From positions 248,001-312,000 of IMG/VR virus record IMGVR_UViG_3300027996_002186: a stretch of DNA of 64,000 nt; one strand, 5' to 3'. The position numbers were made by a program, and so were the translations under genes. The notes below the pieces were generated by a model. The model was given only the letters and a program-made list of their open reading frames with translations. It had not been told where the DNA came from and did no database searches. Below, one piece after another: positions 14,384 through 43,283 of this stretch. Each line of letters opens with the position of its first letter. Position 1 is the stretch's first letter.

Positions 14384-17300
14384 TTATGATAATTTTTTTA
14401 TAATTAGTGGTTGTCCGATTATTTTAGGGATAATTAGTGGTGTTGTTATTCGAATATTTGGTCTCGTCCTCTTACGTAAATTCAGAGTTTCTACATGGTA
14501 TTTATAATCCCAAGTAGATGCAAATATGAAAAAGTCTTTAACACCATATCCAAATTCATCAACCATAGGGTATATAGATTTTATATCCTCTTCTTCACTC
14601 AACTTTAATACAGAACCTTTTCTATTAATTTTCCTTATTTTCCTTTCTTTTATAATACCAAAATCTGTTAAGGTAGTATCAAATTTATAATTACCACTCG
14701 TCTTATATTCACTATTTTTTTCAAAAATTTGTAAATCATAGAATAGTGGCATATAGAATCCACTAAATCTATAAATATTATCAGCGACTATATTTTTATT
14801 ACCATGATAATTTTCAAAAACTTTTGGTCGAAATTGATTTTCGATTATATTAGATGCTATCGGTATTTTATTGAAATAATTTAGATCATTTAAAGATTTA
14901 ATTTTTCCATTTGATAATTCCTTTTTAGGGTTTAATTCATTTGGTAATTCAATTGGTATCTTTCTTAAAGATTTAATTTTAGTTGAAAATAAATCAGGAT
15001 TATTACACTTTATCATATAAGGTAATGTTTCTATATTATTTTTATAATTGTGTCTGGTAAAAGTTCCATCTTCTTCAATAATTACATAATTCACATAATC
15101 AGTAAATCCGTTTTTATTAGAAATATCGTTTATAGACTCCATAAAGTTATAAGCTGTTACCTTTTTATATAAATCATCATAAAGTTCATCCCTATCAGTC
15201 TCGGATATATTCGGAAGTGTGTTATCAGATATATTAATGTTTATTAAAACATTTTTCCACTTTTTATTTATGTATATAACAATACCATTGTCTAATGTGG
15301 AATCAGATATATTAGAATTACAAAGATAATACCTATTATTCATATCTATAATAGGGTTAATTGGGTAGAGCGGTGGTAGTGCTTCTTGTCCTGGATAAAC
15401 ATAATCAGTATCCGGCTCTAATCTATATTCTTGAGTCCATATATTAGAAACTCCTGGTTCATTACCAGGTCTCGCTGGTGTACTTGTAGACCAAATAGTA
15501 TCGTTGTGTATGACTGATTGAGTACCAACCGGAAATACATTTTCTAGGTAAGAAACACTTGGGTTCCAAAGTTCAATAGTTTTCCACCTTGGATTACTTG
15601 ATTGTGTACCCACCCAATACCCTGAAGTAGAAAATTGATTATTCCTAACAAATTTTCTTCTGAAATTTGGATCATAATGGTTACTACTTGTCATCGACAT
15701 ATAATAATTACCTTTATAAAGAACTACATCACCAAAATCATAACCAGTACTAGATGATGCTGGGTTCCAGAAATCTTCTGTTCCACCTGATGAATATTTA
15801 TAATACTCACCGTGATTATACACAAAATCATTTGTAGTATATGTCGTGTTAGGTTCCCAAAATATATTATTTGGACCTAGGAATTGAATAGGTGCACCAT
15901 AGCTGATACTTAATTGGTCATAAAATTCCCACTGTGATTGGTTATAAGGAGCTGATTTTACTTGTCTAAGTGAATATAATCTAATTGGATTATTAGTTGT
16001 TACGTTTGAGTTTGATACGTATAATATATCATCAAATATAACAACAGAACCAGTAGCATAATCTTTATCCATTTTCCAATCATCTATTATCGTCCAATCC
16101 ATTAAATTATCTGATACAGTAACATTATTATTATCAACATCAATTGAAAAATTGTTATCCGATAATAGAATAGAAAATTTATAACCATCAAATCTATTAC
16201 TAGATGATATATTAAATGATTCCAATTCATCAGAATCATTAAGAGTTACACTTTCAACATCATAAATTGAAAATTCAATACCTCTTAATAAAGTTGTATT
16301 TGGTATTGATTTATCACCAATATTAAATTCTGAGTATTTTTTAACATTCTTTTTAATATCAGAATTGTTGAAATATGTATTTCTGTCAAATAGTGATGTG
16401 AAATAATCGAAAGAATAGGTTGCTGATGAAGCACTACCAGTAGAATATGTAGCAACATTTAAATACTTATCCAATTCAAATCTAAAGTTAGTATCTATAT
16501 CACCATTATCATCAAAACTTTCAATGTGTAATGTGTGATGTAAATATGAAGCTGTTGATGAATTTATTGTATAAAAATAATCTAAATTTCTTTCTATCCT
16601 TTTTGGATCAGGATCAAAAGGATTAACACTTCTATTAAATTCTTCAAACATATTAGAATTATTTAAGGAATAAGGATAATCATTAGCTGATGTGGAATTT
16701 TGATAAGACCATCTACAATAGACTGGATTCTTTCTCCAAATTTCCGATAAATCATCATCATCAATCTTAAATGTTTCGTAATTAGCTGTATATTCAGATG
16801 AAACTGGTATATTAACAACTTCGTCCTTATAGATAAAATCATCCAAATCTTTCGGGTTGGATCTACTTGATAAGTTCTCCATATACATTTTTGTTTCATC
16901 CGTTAATGTTATCTCATCTTCTTTTTCATATTCATATTTTGAATATTCTGTGTCAATTATTCTGTCATCAAAATCTTTGATATCACTAAATTTACATTTA
17001 TAAATGTTAAATTTCTTAGGTTGGTTATTATAATCAACTATTATACTAACTTTAGTAGTTTCATTCCTTACTGTATATTCATAATCATTTTGGTTGAAGT
17101 TGAATGAATAATCAGTAACTATTTTTATTGATTCACCATCCCCGATCAAGTTATGTAAAATTCCGTCTATCTCTATCATCCAAACATCAGCATCTTCAAA
17201 TCCATCTATTTGAAGATAATCTATATTATAATCTATTAATTTATTATCAACATCAATTAATCCAAAGTTTTTATTTAAATCATTTTGCTTACCGGTTAAG

Positions 17301-21781: not shown

Positions 21782-23638
21782 ATGATAGAACAATTAAAAG
21801 AAAATATAATTAAGGCCAATGCGTCTTATAGAAAAGGTAATCCTATTATGTCTGATTCTGAGTATGATACATTACTTGAAGAATTAGCTTTACTATCACC
21901 AGATGATGATTTACTATCTTTAGTAGGTCATGTCGTTGTTGATGAATCTCGTAAGAGAAGACTTCCCATTGATATGGCATCAATGAATAAAATTAAATCT
22001 ATGGATGATGTCAATGATTGGTGTCGTCTTAAAGGTATTTCAAAATCCGAAATAGTTATCATAACTCCTAAATTTGATGGTCTTTCTCTTTGTGTGAATG
22101 AATTGGATAATTCTTCATCCACAAGAGGTGATGGAACTTTTGGACAACAATCAGACGAACATTATAAATTGATTGGTAATCATTTAGATGTACATGAAGA
22201 TGTTAATACTTTACCATTTACATATACTTATGGTGAGGTGATGATGGCTAAGAAAAAATTTGAAGATGATTATTCAAAAGACTTCGCTAACCCAAGAAAT
22301 CTTGTTGCTGGTTTACTAAATTCAAAAAGTATTAGTGAATCACTAAAAGATTGTGATTACATTAAGTATGGTGCTATTTGTAGAACTAAATTTAGCACAA
22401 AAAAAGAAATAATTGACGAACTAAATAATGGTCAACGAGTAAAAGTTAATTACCATATCTGTATGATTTCAGAATTAACAGAAGATTTACTTATTGACCT
22501 TTTCCATAAATTATCACCTGATTATGAAATTGATGGTTTAATCATTGAGATTAACGATATATCAATACAAAATAGATTGGGTAGAGAAACTTCCTCAAAC
22601 AATCCAGTTTGGGCAAGAGCATTCAAACATCCAAGTTTCGAGCAAACTGCTGAGTCAGAAGTTATCGGGATATCTTGGAATATTTCAAAACAAGGTTTAT
22701 TAAAACCTATTCTACACATTACTCCTATTAAACTTGATGGTGTTACAGTATCTAATGTTACTGGAAACAACGCTCGTTTTGTAAAAGATATGGGTATCGG
22801 AGTTGGTGCTAAAGTATTAGTGAAACGTAGTGGTATGGTTATACCATTAATCGTTGATGTTTTAGAAACTGTTGATTTCATACAACCTACAATCGAAGGT
22901 GTTGATATTGGTTGGAATGAAGCTGGTATTGAATTAATAACATTAACAGAAACAGACGACCAAAAATTAAAAAAGAATGTTGCATTCTTTGAAATCCTAG
23001 AAGCTGATAATGTATCAGAGGGTGTTATTACCCAACTTTGGGAAGCTGGTCATACAACAATAAAAGACATTCTAAACCTCACAAAAGTTGATTTAGAGAA
23101 GATTGACCGGTTCGGGAAAAGAAAGTCAAGTATAGTGTTCAACTCTATTCAAAAGTCTGTTAAAGACGTTCAATTGAGTAAACTACAACACGCTACAGGT
23201 ATCTTTAGAGGCTTGGGAAGTAAGAAATTAGTATTACTAGAACAATTCACTGAAAAGCCTAGTATTGATAACGTAATGGTGATTGATGGATTCGCTGAGA
23301 AGTCAGCAAAATCTTACATTGATTCTTATGATGAATTCTTTGAGTTCATAAAAGACTTACCCGTTACTATCGAAGAAAAGGTCGAAGTGGCTCCCGTTGG
23401 TGATGATTTAATTGGTAAACAATTTGTCTTCACAGGAGTTCGTAGAAAAGACTTGAATGAAGTGATTGAATCAAGAGGTGGTAAGATTGGTAGTGGTGTA
23501 TCTAAAAACACATCATACTTAGTTGTAAAGGCTACTGGAAGTGGATCATCAAAAGAAAATAAAGCTATCAAGTTAAAAGATTCTGGACAAGATATTGAGG
23601 TTATAACAGTTGAACAATTAGAAGTGATATTAGGATAA
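21782..23638 (+). CDS. ligA: NAD-dependent DNA ligase
   Basis: MSDSEYD, PKFDG, TRGDG, ANPRN, YEIDG, ARAFK, OB domain, HhH, BRCT (FVFTG...GSGVSKNTSYLV). Confidence 0.95.
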   Translation: MIEQLKENIIKANASYRKGNPIMSDSEYDTLLEELALLSPDDDLLSLVGHVVVDESRKRRLPIDMASMNKIKSMDDVNDWCRLKGISKSEIVIITPKFDGLSLCVNELDNSSSTRGDGTFGQQSDEHYKLIGNHLDVHEDVNTLPFTYTYGEVMMAKKKFEDDYSKDFANPRNLVAGLLNSKSISESLKDCDYIKYGAICRTKFSTKKEIIDELNNGQRVKVNYHICMISELTEDLLIDLFHKLSPDYEIDGLIIEINDISIQNRLGRETSSNNPVWARAFKHPSFEQTAESEVIGISWNISKQGLLKPILHITPIKLDGVTVSNVTGNNARFVKDMGIGVGAKVLVKRSGMVIPLIVDVLETVDFIQPTIEGVDIGWNEAGIELITLTETDDQKLKKNVAFFEILEADNVSEGVITQLWEAGHTTIKDILNLTKVDLEKIDRFGKRKSSIVFNSIQKSVKDVQLSKLQHATGIFRGLGSKKLVLLEQFTEKPSIDNVMVIDGFAEKSAKSYIDSYDEFFEFIKDLPVTIEEKVEVAPVGDDLIGKQFVFTGVRRKDLNEVIESRGGKIGSGVSKNTSYLVVKATGSGSSKENKAIKLKDSGQDIEVITVEQLEVILG

Positions 23639-24912: not shown

Positions 24913-25521
24913 ATGAAATTAGATGCAATAACTACATTCTCTGATCAAGAGAAATTATTCAGAGAAAGAACAGGTAAAGATTTTACCGAACTCTACCAAA
25001 AGTACTATCCAAAACTTATTTATTTCACAGGAAGAATTTGTAATGACCCTCAGAAAGCAGAGGATTTATCAACAGATGCTTTCATGACAGCACTTGAAAA
25101 AATCGAAAAGTATGACAGAGAGAAATCACAATTCTCGACATGGCTTTTCACAATCGCAAAAAATCTAACATTACAAAACATTAAGGTCTCTAAGAAGTCA
25201 GTATCATTAGATGTTGAATTTGATAACGAGGGTACAACTATGAAAGATTTCATAGAAGAAGACGACACATCAAACCAAACTGTTGTTAATAATGTCTTTG
25301 ATAAAAAGGCTACTATAATGAAAAGTAGAATCAAGCAATTAAAGGAACCGTATCGAACGGTAATTGAAATGAGAGAAATTAACAGGATGGCATATAAGGA
25401 TATAGCAGACCAACTTGGTAAAAACCTATCAACTATTAAATCACAAATTAGAAATGGCCGCCATATTCTTATTGAACAAACTCAAAATGAGTTTGATGAA
25501 ATAGATGAAATGTACCTTTAA
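24913..25521 (+). CDS. ECF-type sigma-70 factor
   Basis: Region 2 AEDLSTDAF, FSTWLFTIAKN; region 4 LKEPYRTVIEM...YKDIADQLGKNLSTIKSQIRNGR. Confidence 0.9.
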   Translation: MKLDAITTFSDQEKLFRERTGKDFTELYQKYYPKLIYFTGRICNDPQKAEDLSTDAFMTALEKIEKYDREKSQFSTWLFTIAKNLTLQNIKVSKKSVSLDVEFDNEGTTMKDFIEEDDTSNQTVVNNVFDKKATIMKSRIKQLKEPYRTVIEMREINRMAYKDIADQLGKNLSTIKSQIRNGRHILIEQTQNEFDEIDEMYL

Positions 25522-27868: not shown

Positions 27869-28306
27869 ATGAGTATAGTAAAAAATAGAAAAGCATATTA
27901 TGAATATCACATACTTGATGAGTATGAAGCTGGTGTTGTGCTTATGGGTAGTGAAGTTAAATCTATAAGAATGGGTAATGTAACATTATCTGATTCATTC
28001 ATATACTTAAAAAGTGGTGAGGTTTGGATAAAGAATCTAAAGGTAGCAAGGTATGCACAAACTCATATTTCCGAACCACATAATGAGAATCGTGATAAAA
28101 AACTACTTTTAACTAAAAAAGAAATAAATAAAATAAGTAGAAGTTTAGAAGACCAAGGTATAACTTGTATTCCACTTACTATTTTTACTAAACGAAATAA
28201 GCTTAAGATAAAAATTGGTGTTGCTAAGGGAAAAAAGCTTTTTGATAAAAGGCAGAGTATTAAAGAGAAGGATATGAAAAGAGAACTTCAAAGAAATCTA
28301 AAATAA
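27869..28306 (+). CDS. smpB: SsrA-binding protein SmpB
   Basis: NRKAYYEY, EAGVVLMGSEVKS, KKLLL, GVAKGKKLFDKRQSIKE. Confidence 0.95.
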   Translation: MSIVKNRKAYYEYHILDEYEAGVVLMGSEVKSIRMGNVTLSDSFIYLKSGEVWIKNLKVARYAQTHISEPHNENRDKKLLLTKKEINKISRSLEDQGITCIPLTIFTKRNKLKIKIGVAKGKKLFDKRQSIKEKDMKRELQRNLK

Positions 28307-28308
28307 TA

Positions 28309-28680
28309 ATGTCTAAAGAAGAAGAATTTATTTTTTTATTTGAGGAATTAGAAAACTCAAATAATGAAGAAGAAGTTTTTAAGAATCTTAAAAGAATTCT
28401 TAAAGAATCTAGTTCTGTCTTTTATAAGAATAAAATACTTAATAACCCATATTTCAAATCTCTTTTGATTGATGTAAGGGAAGATGTATTAATAGAAATA
28501 TCAGAAATAAGGAAATCATTAAAGGATGAAATAAAATCAATTGATGTTGAAATTATGAGTCTTTTGTCTAAAGACAAAGACAACTCAAATATAAATAAAT
28601 TCAAATCATTGAAACGAGATTGTATATCATTAGTTTATGAAATCGATGATAGAAAAAAAGATATAATTAATTTAATATAG
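28309..28680 (+). CDS. Hypothetical coiled-coil protein
   Basis: Coupled ORF; ends RKKDIINLI (possible tag variant). Confidence 0.6.
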   Translation: MSKEEEFIFLFEELENSNNEEEVFKNLKRILKESSSVFYKNKILNNPYFKSLLIDVREDVLIEISEIRKSLKDEIKSIDVEIMSLLSKDKDNSNINKFKSLKRDCISLVYEIDDRKKDIINLI

Positions 28681-30394
28681 ATTTTATATACTTTTCTATA
28701 TTTTTCAATCTTTCTAAATCATTTTTCATTATATCAATGTCATCAATATTACTATCATTATTCATATAATCTATAACTCCCGTTGGTGATGATGAATTAG
28801 AAAACATTTTATCTAAGCAATGTCTTATAGGTGTGGATTCTGGCTTAAATAAATTATTAATCATAACTTTTCTAATAGACTCAACTTTGCTACATAAAAA
28901 TATGTATTCTTCAATAGAATTTATTTCTTGTTTTAATAAGTAATCTTTTATATACGAACCTAAATATTTACAAATTTTAAGATATTCATTTAGTAGATCA
29001 AATTGTTTGCCTTTTTCTGGTATATCTATATATGTCTGATAATTTTTAGATATTTTATTTTTATAAAAAGAAGATCTTTCATTACTATCTTCATAAAGAA
29101 TTATTACTTTATTAAAATTTCTTTTAATTCTTTCTTCACTATATTCATCTTTAATGGATACCATTAAAGTCAAAATAGACTTATAAAATTGCTCAACATA
29201 GGTTCCAAATTCTGGTCTATTACTATTAATTGAGAAGTATGAATAATCTCCTAATATTGTTGTTGATATAAATTTTTGTAAATTTTTCAAGTCTATTGAC
29301 TTTACATTTATTCCCATTTTGGAAACCAAAATACCTATATATCTTTTAATATTATCGTTTTTAATATCATTATCACTCATTAATTTTAAAGCTCCTAGTC
29401 TATTTACAATTCTATCATTATTAGTTTCTGAACTTTTCTTAAATCCAGCATCTAACATTTTATCTAGATATATAACAACTGCAAAATCAGCATTTTCAAT
29501 ATCTTTCCAATTTTTATTATAAAGTGAGGTGTGTTCATCTTTATATTTAGACCAATTTTTTAATCTACCACGACCACTTAATGGTAAATTAAATATAAAT
29601 GGACTATCTATTTTTTCTTCAGGTTTATTATCGAAATCACTAATAATTAAAGGATAGGCACCTTCTGTATATTTATACACCAGTGAATGGTCATCATTTA
29701 TACTACCTGGGTTACCTAATGACCATGAATACATATGATTTCCACCCAACCAATTTGGAATTCCTATTGAAGAATCAGATCCCCAATTTTTCCAATCGTT
29801 ATTAGGGGGTGAGCTACCCGAAGAAACATCTTGTATAGCATATAATTGTGGATGTGGGGCATTGGTGTCTATATATATTTTACCCTTAGAAAAGCTATCA
29901 AAACTTAGTGAATTATTGAAACAACCAATAATATCATCACCATGTTTAAGATCATAATAATCAACAATTTTAGTTAATGTTCCGGTTTTTATATTTAATG
30001 TGTTTTTTATATATGATACAATTTCACTTGTCATAACATTTCTTTTGTTATTATCATTACTTTGCCACATGATAAAATCATCCATCTTTTTATCACCAAC
30101 ACCAGTATATCCTATAAACCCATCTTCTAAAGAGAACCAGAATTTTAAACAAAAAACACCTTTATCATTTGATACTTCATTATCTGAGTTTATTAATAAA
30201 GCTTTTTTAGCAGATAAATATTCAACATCATTATCTGATATCTTATCAATTGGGTAATCATAATTTTTCAAAATACTTTTTAACCCAATAACAAACTTTT
30301 TAGAATGTTTTTTACCAACCCTTTTACTAACATATTTTAATACTTTAGAAATTGCATCAGAATCAAACGCCTCATATAGATATAAATACTTCAT
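28667..30394 (-). CDS. Putative internal head protein
   Basis: MKYLYLYEAF; AATATATA at 30400-30407, 5 nt upstream. Confidence 0.7.
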   Translation of the reverse strand: MKYLYLYEAFDSDAISKVLKYVSKRVGKKHSKKFVIGLKSILKNYDYPIDKISDNDVEYLSAKKALLINSDNEVSNDKGVFCLKFWFSLEDGFIGYTGVGDKKMDDFIMWQSNDNNKRNVMTSEIVSYIKNTLNIKTGTLTKIVDYYDLKHGDDIIGCFNNSLSFDSFSKGKIYIDTNAPHPQLYAIQDVSSGSSPPNNDWKNWGSDSSIGIPNWLGGNHMYSWSLGNPGSINDDHSLVYKYTEGAYPLIISDFDNKPEEKIDSPFIFNLPLSGRGRLKNWSKYKDEHTSLYNKNWKDIENADFAVVIYLDKMLDAGFKKSSETNNDRIVNRLGALKLMSDNDIKNDNIKRYIGILVSKMGINVKSIDLKNLQKFISTTILGDYSYFSINSNRPEFGTYVEQFYKSILTLMVSIKDEYSEERIKRNFNKVIILYEDSNERSSFYKNKISKNYQTYIDIPEKGKQFDLLNEYLKICKYLGSYIKDYLLKQEINSIEEYIFLCSKVESIRKVMINNLFKPESTPIRHCLDKMFSNSSSPTGVIDYMNNDSNIDDIDIMKNDLERLKNIEKYIKSILN

Positions 30395-30439
30395 GTTATT
30401 ATATATTAAATTTTATTTTATAAATCTAAACTTTATTAC

Positions 30440-30447
30440 TATCTTTG
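30440..30447 (+). promoter_or_regulatory. TAnnTTTG promoter element
   Basis: TATCTTTG at 5' edge of candidate RNA. Confidence 0.5.
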
Positions 30448-30861
30448 TCTAAGATTTAAAGTCACTAAGATAATATATCGTGAGATAAGTTTAGACTTTC
30501 CATCCGGAGACCGATTAAAAGGATTTGGGTATATATAATATGGATGAGTTTTAGTGAAATTATGGTGGTAAGTAGCTGTTAAATAAGTTAACATCTTTGA
30601 TAAACCCAGTGAACCACCTTGTATATAACTATATAATACGTAAAGATGTAGGTGCTTAAAATGTGTTGGTGATAAAGTACTTCAAATAACTAAATGAATA
30701 ATCCCAACTCTATGAAGATTAAAACGAGTAGAAAGGTAACACTACTCAACCAAGGGTGATGAGCCCATTAAAAGGTAATCCTAAGTGATGAGGTCACTAA
30801 AAGTCAAGCAGAAGGTTCTAGGGTTCCGACCATACTTGACAGAAGTTCCAGAATCTTCATA
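30447..30861 (+). ncRNA. Candidate large structured non-coding RNA
   Basis: No ORF of 60 codons or more in the track; more than 10 helices including 10 bp 30711-30720/30852-30861 and 9 bp 30549-30557/30794-30802; family not recognised. Confidence 0.6.
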
Positions 30862-31022
30862 TTATTTCTGTGAATATGAGAAGAATAATTTTTACATATA
30901 ATGATAAAGTTCATAAGGGGATAGTTATTCCTGATAAAATGTTTTGGGGTAATTATAAAATTATATCAGATAATATGATTTTATCATATAGTTTAATTGA
31001 AAAAAAAATAATAAAAATAGAT

Positions 31023-31418
31023 ATGTTACTAAGAGAACAAATTAGCAAAGACTACATGACAGCTTTCAAAGAAAGAAATTTAGTAGCAAAGAGTTTACTT
31101 TCTGTTATTAAGGGAGAAATCCAAACAATTGAAAAAAACAAAATAAAAGAACTATCTGATGAAGAAGTAATGGCTATTTTGTTAAAAACAGCTAAGTCTC
31201 TAAAAGAAACTATTAAGTATGGTGGGGTTCAAGCATCTCTAGAATTAGCTATTGTTGAAGCTTACTTACCAAAACAAATGTCAAGAGAAGAAGTAACTGA
31301 AAAGTTAACTGAGCTTGTAAACTCTGGTGTCACTAAAATGGGTGTTGTTATGAAGGAGTTCGCTGGGTTCAACGACAAGAAGATGGTTTCTGAAATTTTC
31401 AGAGAATTAACAAAATAA
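31023..31418 (+). CDS. yqeY: GatB/YqeY domain protein
   Basis: Start moved to MLLREQISKDYMTAFKER; LSDEEV, VEAYLPKQMSREE, MGVVMK. Confidence 0.85.
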   Translation: MLLREQISKDYMTAFKERNLVAKSLLSVIKGEIQTIEKNKIKELSDEEVMAILLKTAKSLKETIKYGGVQASLELAIVEAYLPKQMSREEVTEKLTELVNSGVTKMGVVMKEFAGFNDKKMVSEIFRELTK

Positions 31419-31430
31419 TTTAGGAAAGAT

Positions 31431-31459
31431 AAAGACTCAGAGTAATCTGGGTCTTTTTT
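31431..31459 (+). terminator. Intrinsic terminator
   Basis: AAGACTCAGA-GTAA-TCTGGGTCTTTTTT. Confidence 0.8.
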
Positions 31460-31610
31460 ATTTCTATTGTATTATATTTTTTATATATACATTATGTCAA
31501 AAACAATCTATAATTATAGAACCGTTTGACTCATTAATAAACGATAGATAGTCTAATATCATAAAACTTTTTTGTACTTTTTGTATATATTAAAAAAAGA
31601 ATAGTTAAAT

Positions 31611-32784: not shown

Positions 32785-33420
32785 ATGGAAATTAAAATTG
32801 ATAGTACTTACAAAGGAACAAGAATCCTTTTTGCGGAAACAGCTAAGAGTAAACGAGTTTTACTTAATGATATGATTGAAATACTTGAGTCTTATGGATA
32901 TCAAGAAATTATGATACCTATCATTCAAAAGCAAGAAACTTTCGAATTGAAGGTTGGTGATGAAAACCAAAATATGATGTATAACTTCAAAGACAGAGGT
33001 AACAGAGATTTATGTTTATCACCAGAATACACAGCAATTGTTCAACAATTAGCTTCTAATAGAATGAAATTTGACAAAGATGTTAAGATGTTCTACATAG
33101 GAGAATGTTTTCGTGGAGAGAATACGCAAAGGGGTAGATGGAGACAATTTACACAATTTGGTGTTGAAGTCTTGAATCCAAGTAAAGATTACTCAGACGA
33201 GATGGTTGAAATTGCTACTAAACTAATTCAATTAGTTACAAAAAATTATGAACTAAACACAGAAGCAACAAGAGGTCTAGATTACTATGATGGTGGAAAA
33301 GGATTCGAAATCGCTTGTCCTGAGTTGGGAGCCGCTAAACAAATTTGTGGAGGTGGGTCTTATAAAGGAGGAGTAGGGTTTGCAATAGGTGTGGATAGAT
33401 TACTATTATGCAACAAATAA
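32785..33420 (+). CDS. hisS: Minimal histidyl-tRNA synthetase catalytic domain
   Basis: LSPEYT, motif 2 FRGENTQRGRWRQFTQFGVE, RGLDYY, GGGSY, motif 3 GFAIGVDRL; only 211 aa, no anticodon domain. Confidence 0.85.
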   Translation: MEIKIDSTYKGTRILFAETAKSKRVLLNDMIEILESYGYQEIMIPIIQKQETFELKVGDENQNMMYNFKDRGNRDLCLSPEYTAIVQQLASNRMKFDKDVKMFYIGECFRGENTQRGRWRQFTQFGVEVLNPSKDYSDEMVEIATKLIQLVTKNYELNTEATRGLDYYDGGKGFEIACPELGAAKQICGGGSYKGGVGFAIGVDRLLLCNK

Positions 33421-40455: not shown

Positions 40456-41526
40456 ATGAAAGTAAACGAAAAATTCTTAGAAAAGTACCTAAATTCTAAT
40501 TCACCAACTGGTTTTGAATACCAATTAGGTGGACAGAAAGTTTGGATGGACTATATCTCAAAGTTTGTAGATAAAGTTGAAATTGATAATTATGGAACAG
40601 CCTATGGTGTGATGGGTAATTTAGATTCAGATTTCAAAGTAGTGATAGAAGCACACGCTGATGAAATCTCTTGGTTTGTCAATTACATAGACTCTAAGGG
40701 TTATATTAAAGTTATTCGTAATGGAGGGTCAGATGCAACAATTGCACCGTCTATGAGAGTAACATTACACGGTGAAAATGGACCAGTTGATGGTGTATTT
40801 GGACATCCAGCTATTCATATAAAGAATAGAAAAAAAGAAGCAACTTTAGATTCAATTTTTATTGATGTTGGAGCTTCTTCAAAAGAAGATGTTGAGAAAA
40901 TGGGTATTCAAATCGGGACCGTTATAACATTCAAAGATAATTTCATGAAACTTGGAGAAAACTATTATACAGGTAGAGCACTTGATAATAGAATAGGTGG
41001 GGTTATGATAGCAGAAGTTGCTAGAAAATTAAAAGAGAAGGGTAAGAAATTACCATTCAAACTTTACGTAGTTAATAGTGTTCAAGAAGAAATTGGATTA
41101 AGAGGAGCACAAATGATTGCTGATACACTTAAACCAAATGTTGCAATTATCACAGATGTATGTCACGAAACATCATCACCTTGTTATACACCTAGTAAAC
41201 AAGGAGAACATATTGCTGGTAATGGTGGAGTTGTAACAAGAGCACCAGCAGTTCACAACATTTTAAGAAAACTTATTTTAGATACTGGTGATGAGAAAAA
41301 GATTCCATATCAATTAGCGGCTTCATCAAGAGCTACTGGAACTGACACAGATGCGTTTGCGTTTTCTAACGGAGGAGTACCATCAGCACTTATCTCTCTA
41401 CCTTTGAAGTATATGCACACGACTTGTGAAACTGTTCATAAAGATGATGTTAAGAATGTTATTAAGTTAATATACCAAACACTTCTTAATATTGAAGAGA
41501 ACCACAATTTTAAGTATAATGTCTAA
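40456..41526 (+). CDS. M42-family aminopeptidase
   Basis: IEAHADEI, RALDNRIG, SVQEEIGLRGA, TDV, GTDTD, YMHT. Confidence 0.95.
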   Translation: MKVNEKFLEKYLNSNSPTGFEYQLGGQKVWMDYISKFVDKVEIDNYGTAYGVMGNLDSDFKVVIEAHADEISWFVNYIDSKGYIKVIRNGGSDATIAPSMRVTLHGENGPVDGVFGHPAIHIKNRKKEATLDSIFIDVGASSKEDVEKMGIQIGTVITFKDNFMKLGENYYTGRALDNRIGGVMIAEVARKLKEKGKKLPFKLYVVNSVQEEIGLRGAQMIADTLKPNVAIITDVCHETSSPCYTPSKQGEHIAGNGGVVTRAPAVHNILRKLILDTGDEKKIPYQLAASSRATGTDTDAFAFSNGGVPSALISLPLKYMHTTCETVHKDDVKNVIKLIYQTLLNIEENHNFKYNV

Positions 41527-43054: not shown

Positions 43055-43126
<72 letters not shown>

Positions 43127-43283
43127 CTAAAAGAGAAGAAATTCCCAAATAAATGAAAATAAATTTGGTTAGAAATAACTAAATGTTAAATAACTGGAGT
43201 TTTTTAATTTATTCTAAATATGTAATAATCTACTCTATGTAAATAATTTTCGGATTCAAATAGTTTATATGCTTTTAAGTATC

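What the first reader, a model, noticed from the sequence alone, without database searches (positions are those of the whole stretch)
30447..30861. Candidate large, ornate non-coding RNA (~415 nt)
Seen: a 630 nt gap before the true yqeY start, beginning at a TAnnTTTG element, visibly more GC-rich than its flanks and densely paired. Helices: 30447-52/30491-96, 30462-65/30480-83, 30501-05/30542-46, 30564-69/30613-18, 30577-82/30588-93, 30591-98/30642-49, 30665-69/30704-08, 30711-20/30852-61 (10 bp), 30726-31/30742-47, 30754-57/30763-66, 30803-08/30835-40, and a UCCG-capped hairpin at 30822-31. Long-range or pseudoknot options: 30549-57/30794-802, 30520-25/30777-82, 30525-30/30604-09. GTGATGAG occurs twice in hairpin loops (30756, 30785), matching the C-box/K-loop consensus RUGAUGA. 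I could not match tmRNA, RNase P, SRP or group I/II cores. Inference: a new or divergent large phage RNA in the style of GOLLD/ROOL.
Basis: partly seen in the sequence, partly recalled or inferred. Interest (0 to 1): 0.8.

Follow-up and report, generated by a model that had tools for sequence, protein, structure and literature searches.

The report
New pseudoknotted RNA family, huge phages
The flagged stretch is a real, strongly conserved and intricately folded RNA of about 410 bases that matches no catalogued RNA family. It heads the yqeY gene in the translation-gene island of huge phages that, by their promoter type and clade, infect Bacteroidetes, and its job is still unknown.

Summary
The finding holds up. 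Window ~30453-30863 (+ strand) encodes a structured RNA with its own Bacteroidetes-type promoter (TAtcTTTG, 30440-30447; such a box lies upstream in 49/49 distinct relatives).

- **Conservation:** I recovered about 55 homologues from huge-phage contigs. The RNA is 88% identical to LR745206, where the neighbouring 575-aa protein is 42% identical.
- **Structure:** Covariation supports 13 helices, including two H-type pseudoknots (domain 1, 30556-30710) and a six-way junction closed by a 10-bp helix (domain 2, 30711-30861). Domain 2 is 98.8% paired against 90.1% in shuffles, with 17 pairs changed on both sides (0/500 shuffles reach this).
Seven are confirmed. The K-loop reading, the UCCG hairpin and most long-range options are not.
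- **Known families:** Rfam 15 and ARAGORN find nothing. The defining features of tmRNA, RNase P, OLE, ROOL/GOLLD and T-box are not met.
- **Context:** Synteny is fixed as smpB-p123-<p575-RNA>-yqeY(-tRNA arrays). No full-length member has a hairpin terminator between the RNA and the next ORF, which starts 4-36 nt downstream in most loci.
- **Reduced variants:** Domain 2 alone, or pseudoknot A alone with a terminator, still sit before yqeY.

Best reading (inferred): an RNA co-transcribed with yqeY that binds YqeY, as a ribonucleoprotein (RNP) and/or a feedback leader. Function is unproven.

The parts
30428..30447 (+). Promoter: conserved AAACTTT, 5-nt spacer, then a Bacteroidetes-type -7 box TAtcTTTG (30440-30447). 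The transcription start is inferred at about 30453-30456.
   Evidence: A TAnnTTTG box lies upstream of the RNA in 49 of 49 distinct loci, 16-127 nt before helix H1 in 47 of them, usually preceded by AAACTTT. Near-identical to LR745206. The start site itself is inferred, not measured.
30455..30555 (+). Variable 5' domain. It is closed by helix H0 (30463-70 CACUAAGA with 30548-55 UUUUAGUG) and holds an inner helix 30501-05/30542-46 plus a hairpin that carries a GAAA tetraloop in relatives.
   Evidence: Length varies from about 8 nt to about 115 nt between clades. H0 shows compensatory changes: GUUAAGAC/GUCUUAAC, ACUAAGAC/GUCUUAGU, AUUGAGAC/GUCUCAAU, AUCAAAAC/GUUUUGAU (read by eye). A best-match statistic does not separate own from cross pairings (8.2 against 7.9).
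30556..30649 (+). Pseudoknot A. H1 is 30564-69/30613-18 and H2 is 30575-78/30607-10. H3 (30591-98/30642-49) pairs the H1/H2 loop with downstream sequence.
   Evidence: H1+H2 are 99.4% paired and H3 is 99.3% paired. H3 has 12-15 double changes at each of three pairs. 0/500 shuffles reach the observed pairing, and slid controls reach at most 72%.
30650..30710 (+). Pseudoknot B. H4 is 30650-57/30675-82, interleaved with H5, 30663-69/30704-10.
   Evidence: H4 is 91% paired with 46 double-changed cells. H5 is 80.5% paired with 20 double-changed cells, and one clade has a different 7-bp complement (UUGGUGU/ACACCAA). 0/500 shuffles reach the pairing for either. H5 is the weakest helix.
30711..30861 (+). 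Domain 2, a six-way junction closed by H6 (30711-20/30852-61). It contains H7 (30726-31/30742-47, invariant loop AAUGGUAACA), variable H8 (30754-56/30764-66), H9 (30773-75/30780-82), invariant hairpin H10 (30784-89/30793-98), H11 (30803-08/30835-40, with a variable insertion) and H12 (30814-17/30828-31).
   Evidence: Covariance model R1 finds 60 matches. 98.8% of cells are paired against 90.1% in shuffles, 17 of 30 pairs change on both sides, and 0/500 shuffles reach this on all five measures; slid controls give 37-51%. The single-sequence MFE reproduces the fold, z -2.46.
30735..30849 (+). Candidate third pseudoknot (inferred). GG(U)AAC in the H7 loop (30735-40) would pair with GUUCC (30845-49), which lies in the junction just before the H6 3' strand.
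   Evidence: GGUAAC is present in 52/53 distinct sequences and GUUCC in 50/53 by pattern match. Both are kept in the reduced LR756502 variant. Because both segments are invariant, covariation cannot test the pairing.
30876..31418 (+). Downstream ORF in the same transcription unit. The YqeY domain starts at ATG 31023. An in-frame 49-aa N-terminal extension starts at ATG 30876, 13 nt after the mapped end of the RNA.
   Evidence: Pfam YqeY, E 3.8e-15. The 180-aa ORF is kept in L011 and L030 with amino-acid changes. In most loci the yqeY ATG lies 21-36 nt after H6.
31431..31466 (+). Intrinsic terminator ending the RNA-yqeY unit.
   Evidence: This is the only terminator-like site in 30300-31500: an 11-bp stem followed by a T run.
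27869..28306 (+). smpB, a syntenic neighbour of the RNA.
   Evidence: Pfam SmpB, E 1.3e-53. The order smpB-p123-<p575-RNA>-yqeY is conserved across the loci.
28667..30394 (-). p575, a divergently transcribed conserved protein of unknown fold. It was used to fetch the homologous loci.
   Evidence: 66 homologues and no Pfam family. The AF2 model has pLDDT 85.8 but no fold match in PDB or AFDB.

Best explanation
**Shown.** Window ~30453-30863 encodes a member of a previously uncatalogued family of large structured RNAs found in huge phages.
- Its relatives belong to the Mahaphage clade, which is predicted to infect Bacteroidetes.
- It is transcribed from its own strong Bacteroidetes-type promoter.
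- It folds into a variable 5' domain, two consecutive H-type pseudoknots, and a six-way-junction domain closed by a 10-bp helix.
- No terminator separates it from the next ORF, so it is made as the 5' part of the yqeY transcript.

**Inferred.** The RNA is a binding partner of the YqeY protein that it is co-expressed with. YqeY is a GatB-tail-like tRNA/RNA-binding module. The complex would act in the phage's translation and tRNA programme as an RNP, in the way the OLE RNA gene sits next to the gene of its partner OapA. The same binding, next to the start codon and a U-rich tract, could also feed back on yqeY expression.

The invariant single-stranded elements are the likely contact or tertiary sites. 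These are the H7 loop AAUGGUAACA, hairpin H10, the H12 loop and the junction CAGnnGUUCC.
For: **A real functional RNA.**
- It is 87.7% identical to LR745206, against 78.9% for alignable neighbouring DNA and 42% for the adjacent protein. Conservation stops abruptly at 30863.
- About 55 homologues were recovered where the flanking protein is only about 30% identical.
- Covariation supports the fold.
- G-U pairs fix the + strand as the transcribed strand.
- A promoter box lies upstream in 49/49 distinct loci.

**Co-transcription with yqeY.**
- The ORF start lies 4-36 nt after H6 in most loci.
- 0/47 distinct loci have a hairpin terminator within 60 nt after the RNA, while 15/47 have one 400-720 nt downstream.
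- In this window the only terminator follows yqeY.

**The RNA stays with yqeY.**
- In LR756502 an extra 575-aa gene was inserted between p575 and the RNA, not between the RNA and yqeY. There a reduced RNA, domain 2 only, still abuts yqeY.
- The pseudoknot-A-only variants in L061 and L073 also abut yqeY.
- The one apparent 'RNA without yqeY' case, L084, is a recent deletion that leaves a yqeY C-terminal remnant.

**YqeY binds RNA.**
- The YqeY domain enhances tRNA binding in D. radiodurans GlnRS and forms the GatB tail that recognises tRNA (abstracts of PMC1865053 and PMC2811023).
- The Breaker laboratory reports preliminary evidence that YqeY binds the large ncRNA OLE. It also notes that ole and oapA colocalise, which is how OapA was found as a partner (PMC12054373).
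Against: - No binding data exist, so the YqeY link rests on gene adjacency within one related phage group whose synteny is conserved anyway. The loci are not independent observations.
- yqeY persists without the RNA in L022, L056 and L014.
- The RNA sits in front of unrelated ORFs in L055 and L051.
- No canonical expression platform is conserved. The spacer to the start codon is unconserved AU-rich sequence.
- The RNA is not homologous to OLE: Rfam gives no hit at E<=10.
- The size and the number of invariant nucleotides would also fit a ribozyme or an RNA that binds host machinery.
Confidence: 0.4

Rival explanations
1. A purely cis-acting sensor, meaning a very large riboswitch or a T-box-like attenuator. 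Its ligand would be something other than YqeY, for example uncharged tRNA or a metabolite. Ligand-dependent folding of the closing helix next to a U-rich tract and the start codon would control read-through or initiation of yqeY.
For: - The RNA lies upstream of, and co-oriented with, the same gene at 4-36 nt in most loci.
- No full-length member has a terminator of its own.
- L073 has the classic aptamer, canonical terminator (GGAACGGUA...UACCGUUCC plus U8), gene layout. In L061 the 3' strand of the pseudoknot helix H3 is followed directly by U8.
- About 60% of members have at least 5 U right after H6 (counted by eye).
- The H7 loop contains UGGU, which is complementary to a tRNA 3' ACCA end, as in T-box discriminators (resemblance only).
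- The window unit runs promoter, RNA, one ORF, terminator.
Against: - At 320-410 nt with 13 helices it is larger than any known riboswitch.
- Rfam T-box and riboswitch models give nothing.
- No alternative (antiterminator) pairing is conserved.
- H6 is AU-rich and closes a 130-nt multiloop, so it would make a poor terminator.
- U runs are expected by chance in DNA that is 75% A+T.
- The RNA is kept in front of unrelated genes in L055 and L051.
Confidence: 0.25
2. A trans-acting stable RNA in the manner of ROOL, GOLLD or the T4 stable RNAs C and D. It would be processed from the 5' end of the operon transcript and act on tRNAs, ribosomes or host defences, independently of YqeY.
For: - Large, ornate and extremely conserved, with many invariant unpaired nucleotides.
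- Its own strong promoter.
- It lies in a translation island with smpB, a HisRS-like gene and tRNA arrays. In LR745206 it lies about 6.6 kb upstream of the first of the tRNA arrays, which hold 59 tRNAs in all. In L093 the order is RNA, yqeY, p70, then tRNAs on one strand.
- ROOL and GOLLD are typically phage-borne and near tRNA genes (established knowledge from Weinberg et al.; recalled, not tested here).
Against: - No terminator or recognisable processing site follows it in any of 47 distinct full-length loci.
- Adjacency to yqeY survives an upstream insertion and domain loss.
- There is no homology to ROOL or GOLLD.
- It is lost in several relatives that keep the tRNA-island genes.
Confidence: 0.17
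3. A non-canonical partner RNA for the phage SmpB. It would be a tmRNA analogue that has lost the standard tRNA-like domain, or uses domain 2 in its place.
For: - smpB lies 2 kb away in conserved synteny in nearly every locus.
- The complete 634,780-bp relative LR745206 encodes SmpB and 59 tRNAs but no tmRNA detectable by ARAGORN, and it has a single copy of this RNA.
- The size (~400 nt) and the tandem H-type pseudoknots recall tmRNA.
Against: - ARAGORN and the Rfam tmRNA models (standard, alpha, beta, cyano) find nothing, even at E<=10 on 381 nt.
- The 5' end is variable and can be about 8 nt long.
- The 3' end pairs internally (H6), so no acceptor stem joins the two ends.
- No covarying partner exists for 30843-44, and the CCA after GUUCC is not invariant.
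- No conserved tag ORF is present (alignments).
- Several relatives have SmpB but no RNA at this locus.
- Lak phages and the 636-kb and 735-kb phages have SmpB with neither this RNA nor a tmRNA within 12 kb.
- Phage SmpB could simply use host tmRNA.
Confidence: 0.07
4. A ribozyme, either RNase-P-like for the phage's tRNA arrays or self-cleaving. Its catalytic core would be built around the invariant GG(U)AAC/GUUCC pairing.
For: - The motif GACAG followed by a short invariant strand and then the closing helix superficially recalls the RNase P order J18/2, P4 3' strand, P2 3' strand.
- The candidate pairing has a bulged U like P4. This is my own comparison from memory of E. coli M1 RNA, so it is a lead, not a test.
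- The relative genome carries 59 tRNAs.
Against: - None of the Rfam RNase P families, nor any ribozyme family, hits at E<=10.
- The conserved CR-I (GGAAAGUC) is absent.
- The two bases after CAG vary freely (AA, GC, AC, UA, GA), whereas RNase P conserves them.
- The topology differs: the 5' strand sits inside a hairpin loop.
- The pseudoknots are local, not core-spanning.
Confidence: 0.04

Closest known systems
OLE RNA and the OLE RNP (Bacillota)
   Same: - Both are large, ornate, highly conserved RNAs.
- The RNA gene colocalises with the gene of a protein partner (ole with oapA).
- YqeY and bS21 are reported as OLE binders, preliminarily for YqeY (PMC12054373).
- Both have links to translation proteins.
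   Different: - No sequence or structure homology: Rfam OLE gives no hit.
- About 320-410 nt against about 600 nt.
- Phage-borne with a Bacteroidetes-type promoter, against Gram-positive cellular genomes.
- It has two H-type pseudoknots.
- The neighbouring partner candidate is YqeY, not a membrane protein such as OapA.
ROOL and GOLLD RNAs (large phage-associated ncRNAs)
   Same: Both are phage-encoded, large, multi-helix RNAs that lie in or near tRNA gene regions and have no known function.
   Different: - No homology by Rfam.
- This RNA is smaller.
- It has no terminator of its own and directly abuts an ORF.
- It is confined, as far as searched, to one clade of huge phages.
tmRNA (ssrA) with SmpB
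   Same: Both lie near smpB, are about 400 nt long, and have consecutive H-type pseudoknots.
   Different: There is no tRNA-like domain, no 3' CCA or acceptor stem, and no tag reading frame. ARAGORN and Rfam do not detect it.
T-box leaders and ribosomal-protein or aaRS autoregulatory leaders
   Same: - Both are structured 5' leaders with a pseudoknot, placed in front of a translation-related gene.
- One variant (L073) has an aptamer-plus-terminator layout.
- A target-mimicry logic is possible.
   Different: - No T-box sequence, specifier loop or Rfam hit.
- Much larger than r-protein leaders.
- No conserved terminator/antiterminator pair in full-length members.
Bacterial RNase P RNA
   Same: Both have a GACAG junction followed by an invariant strand, a possible bulged-U pseudoknot helix, and a link to tRNA genes.
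   Different: The conserved regions CR-I to CR-V are absent, the topology differs, and Rfam gives no hit.

Membership tests
tmRNA | A tRNA-like domain: an acceptor stem formed by the 5' and 3' ends, a T-arm, a G3-U70 pair and a 3' CCA. | tested here: not met
   ARAGORN finds none in the window or in any locus. Rfam tmRNA families give no hit at E<=10. The 5' end is variable and the 3' end pairs internally with 30711-20. 30843-44 have no covarying partner.
tmRNA | A conserved tag-peptide reading frame with a resume codon and a stop. | tested here: not met
   The alignments show no conserved ORF. The variable stretches are AU-rich with frequent stops, and the apparent AUG-GUR-GUA frame changes its stop position with helix covariation (by inspection).
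tmRNA | Binding to SmpB. | not testable with these tools
   Only gene proximity is shown.
RNase P RNA (bacterial A/B, archaeal, type T) | A conserved P4 core (CR-I GGAAAGUC and CR-V ACAGAA...GGCUUA) and family-level homology. | tested here: not met
   No Rfam RNase P hit at E<=10. No CR-I is present. The bases after CAG vary.
OLE RNA | Homology to the OLE consensus (Rfam RF01071). | tested here: not met
   No hit at gathering score or at E<=10.
OLE RNA | The RNA gene colocalises with a protein-partner gene, and it binds YqeY and bS21. | tested here: inconclusive
   Colocalisation with yqeY is shown. Binding is not testable here. The literature precedent is preliminary (PMC12054373).
ROOL / GOLLD | Homology to the Rfam models. 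| tested here: not met
   No hits.
T-box leader | Stem I with a specifier loop, a conserved T-box sequence forming an antiterminator, and a competing terminator. | tested here: not met
   No Rfam hit. No hairpin terminator lies within 60 nt in 0/47 distinct full-length members. Only the reduced L073 variant has one.
Cis-regulatory leader (generic riboswitch criterion) | Consistently upstream of, and co-oriented with, the same gene family, with an expression platform. | tested here: inconclusive
   The upstream position is met. The loci are related and syntenic, so they are not independent observations. No conserved expression platform was found.
C/D-box K-turn or K-loop | A conserved RUGAUGA box forming tandem G-A pairs opposite a CUGA box or within a loop. 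| tested here: not met
   The copy at 30757 is a non-conserved loop (CGAAAG, ACAAAU and others in relatives). The copy at 30785 is Watson-Crick paired in H10 and is GUGAUUAG in a subclade.

The most novel reading that the evidence does not exclude
The RNA is the RNA subunit of a phage-encoded particle that targets translation. In the most novel version it works with the neighbouring SmpB, and perhaps YqeY, as a ribosome-rescue or ribosome-hijacking RNA that lacks a canonical tRNA-like domain. This would be a second, unrecognised solution to what tmRNA does, in phages that carry smpB and 59 tRNAs but no detectable tmRNA.
Probability: 0.07. Interest if true: 0.95.

Novelty: categorically new. 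Interest (0 to 1): 0.72.

Why it matters
Large, intricately folded bacterial and phage RNAs with strong covariation are rare. When solved, they have repeatedly revealed new biology: HEARO turned out to be the IscB guide RNA, OLE forms an RNP, and ROOL and GOLLD form RNA cages.

- **The find itself.** This is a well-supported new class with 13 helices, two or three pseudoknots and dozens of invariant unpaired bases. As far as searched, it is confined to the largest known phages.
- **Its setting.** It sits inside their private translation toolkit of smpB, yqeY, an aaRS fragment and tRNA arrays.
- **What it could explain.** It gives a concrete handle on two open questions. One is what the widespread but uncharacterised YqeY protein binds. 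The other is why huge phages carry smpB without a tmRNA.
- **Why it is tractable.** Natural reduced variants already exist (domain 2 alone, pseudoknot A alone), which amounts to a ready-made dissection of the RNA.

Tried and rejected
1. **Rfam 15.** Searched at gathering score on the whole window and at E<=10 on 901 and 381 nt. Only chance-level CRISPR-repeat and snoRNA matches appeared, best E 0.61.
2. **ARAGORN.** Run on the window, about 40 loci and the whole LR745206 genome. No tmRNA was found.
3. **RNase P by eye.** The motif GGUGGUAAGUAGC resembles the type-A L13 region, and GACAGAA resembles J18/2. I rejected this on topology, the absence of CR-I, the variable bases after CAG and the lack of any Rfam hit.
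4. **A tRNA-like 3' end (GUUCCA as N-CCA).** Rejected. There is no covarying acceptor partner, and the A is a C in LR745206 and LR756502.
5. **Whole-region folding energy.** Not significant (z -1.29). It is uninformative here because the pseudoknots are not modelled.
6. **Exact-pattern scan of 185,579 species genomes.** It gave 3 hits, all chance matches inside GC-rich coding DNA. No cellular copy was found at that sensitivity.
7. **Function of p575.** Nothing came from Pfam, PHROGs, NCBIfam, the protein atlas, or Foldseek against PDB and AFDB clusters.
8. **Supplement of the huge-phage paper.** The 'tmRNA' hits were the letters TMRNA inside protein translations.
9. **Best-match statistic for helix H0.** It did not discriminate in AU-rich sequence, so H0 rests on compensatory changes read by eye.
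10. **Literature searches** for a described smpB- or yqeY-associated phage RNA motif. None was found. The 10,006-candidate virus RNA catalogue could not be checked because no supplement is held.
Full report
**1. What is at the coordinates**

The flagged stretch lies between a 575-aa ORF on the minus strand (28667-30394, 'p575') and a plus-strand ORF that carries a YqeY domain. An SmpB gene lies 2 kb upstream (27869-28306; Pfam E 1.3e-53). The TAnnTTTG box is at 30440-30447. G+C is modestly raised, 0.31-0.36 against 0.21-0.26 in the immediate flanks. The minimum free energy of the whole 415 nt is not better than shuffles (z -1.29; minus strand +0.17). That criterion turns out to be a poor one here.

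**2. Conservation**

- The only relative in the phage collection is LR745206, a complete 634,780-bp huge-phage genome. Window 30399-30863 is 87.7% identical to it, and identity collapses exactly at 30863.
- The alignable neighbourhood averages 78.9%, and the adjacent p575 protein is only 42% identical.
- The huge-phage paper places its largest genomes in the 'Mahaphage' clade, predicted to infect Bacteroidetes (PMC7162821). The promoter type fits that.
- I used p575 as a handle. It has 66 homologues and no Pfam family. One metagenome scan fetched 79 loci. A profile search found the RNA upstream of p575 in about 55 of them, although the protein is only about 30% identical there.
- A motif scan found 16 viral contigs of 14-483 kb (14 beyond the window's own genome), all with the same gene context. 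It also found three species-genome hits, which are chance matches in coding DNA.
- The conserved core is window ~30556-30861. The first ~100 nt vary in length and sequence between clades.

**3. Structure**

- RNAalifold on 39 sequences predicted 44 pairs, 20 of them with compensatory changes.
- On 54 distinct sequences I counted pairs for 13 helices. I ran shuffle and slide controls for domain 1, including both pseudoknot helices.
  - H1+H2 are 99.4% paired.
  - H3 (30591-98/30642-49, a pseudoknot with the H1/H2 hairpin loop) is 99.3% paired, with 12-15 double changes at each of three pairs.
  - H4 is 91% paired.
  - H5 is 80.5% paired and forms the second pseudoknot, interleaved with H4. It is the weakest helix.
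  - All four exceed every one of 500 shuffles in pairing, and slid registers give far less.
- For domain 2 I built a covariance model, collected 60 matches and used the pair-counting tool. 98.8% of cells are paired against 90.1% in shuffles. 17 of 30 pairs change on both sides. 0/500 shuffles reach the observed value on all five measures, and slid controls give 37-51%.
- Domain 2 folded alone reproduces this structure, z -2.46.
- G-U pairs that would be A-C on the other strand fix the + strand as the transcribed one.
- A mutual-information scan returned the same helices at the top and no further convincing partner.
- In the variable 5' domain, a closing helix H0 (30463-70/30548-55) shows several compensatory changes between clades (read by eye).
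- Two invariant five-base strands could form a third pseudoknot with a bulged U: GG(U)AAC in the H7 loop and GUUCC just before the H6 3' strand. Because both are invariant, covariation cannot test this.

**4.

- Seven of the eleven local helices are confirmed and an eighth is plausible.
- The first helix overlaps the promoter and is broken in close relatives.
- 30462-65/30480-83 and 30577-82/30588-93 clash with covarying helices.
- The UCCG hairpin is replaced by H12.
- Two long-range options use the non-conserved 5' domain.
- The third long-range option (30549-57/30794-802) is uncompensated in most clades. An equivalent pairing does appear in the reduced LR756502 variant, where the H10 5' strand is missing.
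- GUGAUGAG copy 1 is a variable loop. Copy 2 is the paired stem of an invariant hairpin. Neither is a K-loop.

**5. Transcription unit and context**

- A TAnnTTTG box, usually preceded by AAACTTT, lies upstream of the RNA in 49 of 49 distinct loci, 16-127 nt before H1 in 47 of them. The RNA therefore has its own conserved promoter, and its minimal form starts only a few bases before H1.
- Downstream, the next ORF starts 4-36 nt after H6 in most loci, and it is nearly always yqeY.
- None of 47 distinct full-length loci has a hairpin terminator within 60 nt after the RNA, while 15 have one 400-720 nt downstream. In the window the only terminator follows yqeY, at 31431-31466.
- In the window an in-frame ATG at 30876 gives a 180-aa ORF that is conserved in L011 and L030.
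- The gene order smpB-p123-<p575-RNA>-yqeY-p70 is conserved, often followed by tRNA arrays.

Informative exceptions:
- The RNA is absent, with no room for it, in L022 and L056. It is replaced by other genes in L014, L021, L023 and L059.
- The RNA sits in front of unrelated ORFs in L055 and L051.
- L084, which looked like an RNA without yqeY, keeps a yqeY C-terminal remnant, so it is a recent deletion.
- L061 and L073 keep only pseudoknot A. In L061 it is followed by U8. In L073 it is followed by a canonical terminator and then yqeY.
- In the 642-kb phage LR756502 an extra 575-aa gene lies between p575 and the RNA. The RNA there is a ~215-nt domain-2-only form that directly abuts yqeY.

The RNA is therefore modular. 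When present, it stays attached to yqeY.

**6. Is it something known?**

- Rfam 15 gives no family at gathering score, and only chance-level hits at E<=10 even on 381 nt.
- *tmRNA* was the obvious suspect because of smpB. No tRNA-like domain, acceptor stem, 3' CCA or tag frame exists. ARAGORN finds no tmRNA in any locus.
- The complete genome LR745206 has SmpB, 59 tRNAs, one copy of this RNA and no ARAGORN-detectable tmRNA. That keeps a non-canonical SmpB partnership alive as a low-probability reading.
- Other huge phages with SmpB (Lak phages and the 636-kb and 735-kb genomes) have neither this RNA nor a tmRNA within 12 kb.
- The RNase P resemblances I noted by eye fail on conserved regions, topology and Rfam.
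- OLE, ROOL, GOLLD, HEARO and T-box models give nothing.
- Literature searches found no description of the family.

**7. How it most likely works**

Shown:
- It is a structured RNA under strong purifying selection.
- It has its own promoter.
- It is co-transcribed with yqeY.

Inferred:
- The RNA and YqeY work together. YqeY is the free-standing form of the GatB tail domain. That domain recognises tRNA, and it increases tRNA affinity when fused to Deinococcus GlnRS (PMC2811023, PMC1865053).
- The Breaker laboratory reports preliminary evidence that YqeY binds OLE RNA. It recalls that OapA was found as an OLE partner because ole and oapA colocalise (PMC12054373).
- A large RNA encoded immediately upstream of yqeY in one transcription unit fits that pattern.
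- Binding could build an RNP that acts in the phage's translation programme. Because the RNA ends 4-36 nt from the start codon, next to a U-rich tract, binding could also feed back on yqeY expression.

I put this at 0.40. The rivals are:

| Rival | Probability |
|---|---|
| A cis sensor for another ligand (the L073 and L061 layouts favour attenuation) | 0.25 |
| A free-standing processed RNA in the ROOL/GOLLD or T4 stable-RNA manner | 0.17 |
| An SmpB partner | 0.07 |
| A ribozyme | 0.04 |

That it is a genuine new RNA family I hold at about 0.95.

**8. Verdict**

The boundaries are better set at ~30453-30863, with the conserved core at 30556-30861. The RNA is not free-standing but heads the yqeY unit. 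Function remains open, and the decisive tests are transcript-end mapping and YqeY, SmpB and tRNA binding assays.

Noticed in passing
window 27869-28306; whole LR745206 (L102-L114): The phage encodes a full-length SmpB. The complete 634,780-bp relative carries 59 tRNA genes but no tmRNA detectable by ARAGORN. Either the phage SmpB works with host tmRNA or its partner is unrecognised.
   Followed up: partly
window 28667-30394 (-): p575 is a conserved protein with 66 homologues in huge-phage contigs and a confident AF2 model (pLDDT 85.8). It has no Pfam, PHROG or NCBIfam family and no fold match in PDB or AFDB clusters. It may be a new fold.
   Followed up: partly
window 30876-31022: An in-frame 49-aa extension upstream of the YqeY domain gives a 180-aa ORF that starts 13 nt after the mapped end of the RNA. 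The ORF is kept, with amino-acid changes, in L011 and L030. It is absent in LR745206, which has a different small ORF there.
   Followed up: partly
L115 (LR756502) 16236-16450: This is a natural domain-2-only form of the RNA, about 215 nt. The H10 5' strand is missing, and UCACCAAAA can instead pair with a 5' UUGUGGUGA. An extra 575-aa ORF (L115 14415-16142) with no family match lies upstream.
   Followed up: partly
L061 2243-2460 (-); L073 663-880 (-): These are natural pseudoknot-A-only forms of the RNA. In L061 the pseudoknot is followed by U8. In L073 it is followed by a canonical terminator. In both, the yqeY start codon then follows directly.
   Followed up: partly
window 32785-33420: A 211-aa ORF matches only the class-II catalytic core of histidyl-tRNA synthetase (Pfam E 1.3e-22), so it is a truncated, HisZ-like fragment. 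It is 82% identical in LR756502, far more conserved than its neighbours.
   Followed up: no
window 30428-30447 and the equivalent sites in 49 loci: The promoter has a conserved AAACTTT placed 5 nt upstream of the TAnnTTTG box, rather than the usual -33 TTTG spacing. This may be a phage-specific promoter variant. A sigma-70 family (regions 2 and 4) gene lies at 24913-25521.
   Followed up: no
H11 of the RNA (window 30809-30813; e.g. L040, L046, L055, L083): Several clades carry a ~25-nt hairpin inserted after the H11 5' strand. L036 and L071 carry larger insertions there and in the pseudoknot-A linker. These mark solvent-exposed, tolerant sites.
   Followed up: no
window 21782-23638; 40456-41526; 43055-43127: Other genes in the window include an NAD-dependent DNA ligase, an M42 aminopeptidase and a single tRNA-Met.
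   Followed up: no
window 30587 / 30595 / 30645: G30587 covaries with C30595 (GC 36, AU 14), and C30595 also covaries with its H3 partner G30645. This could be a base triple or an alternative local hairpin in pseudoknot A.
   Followed up: no
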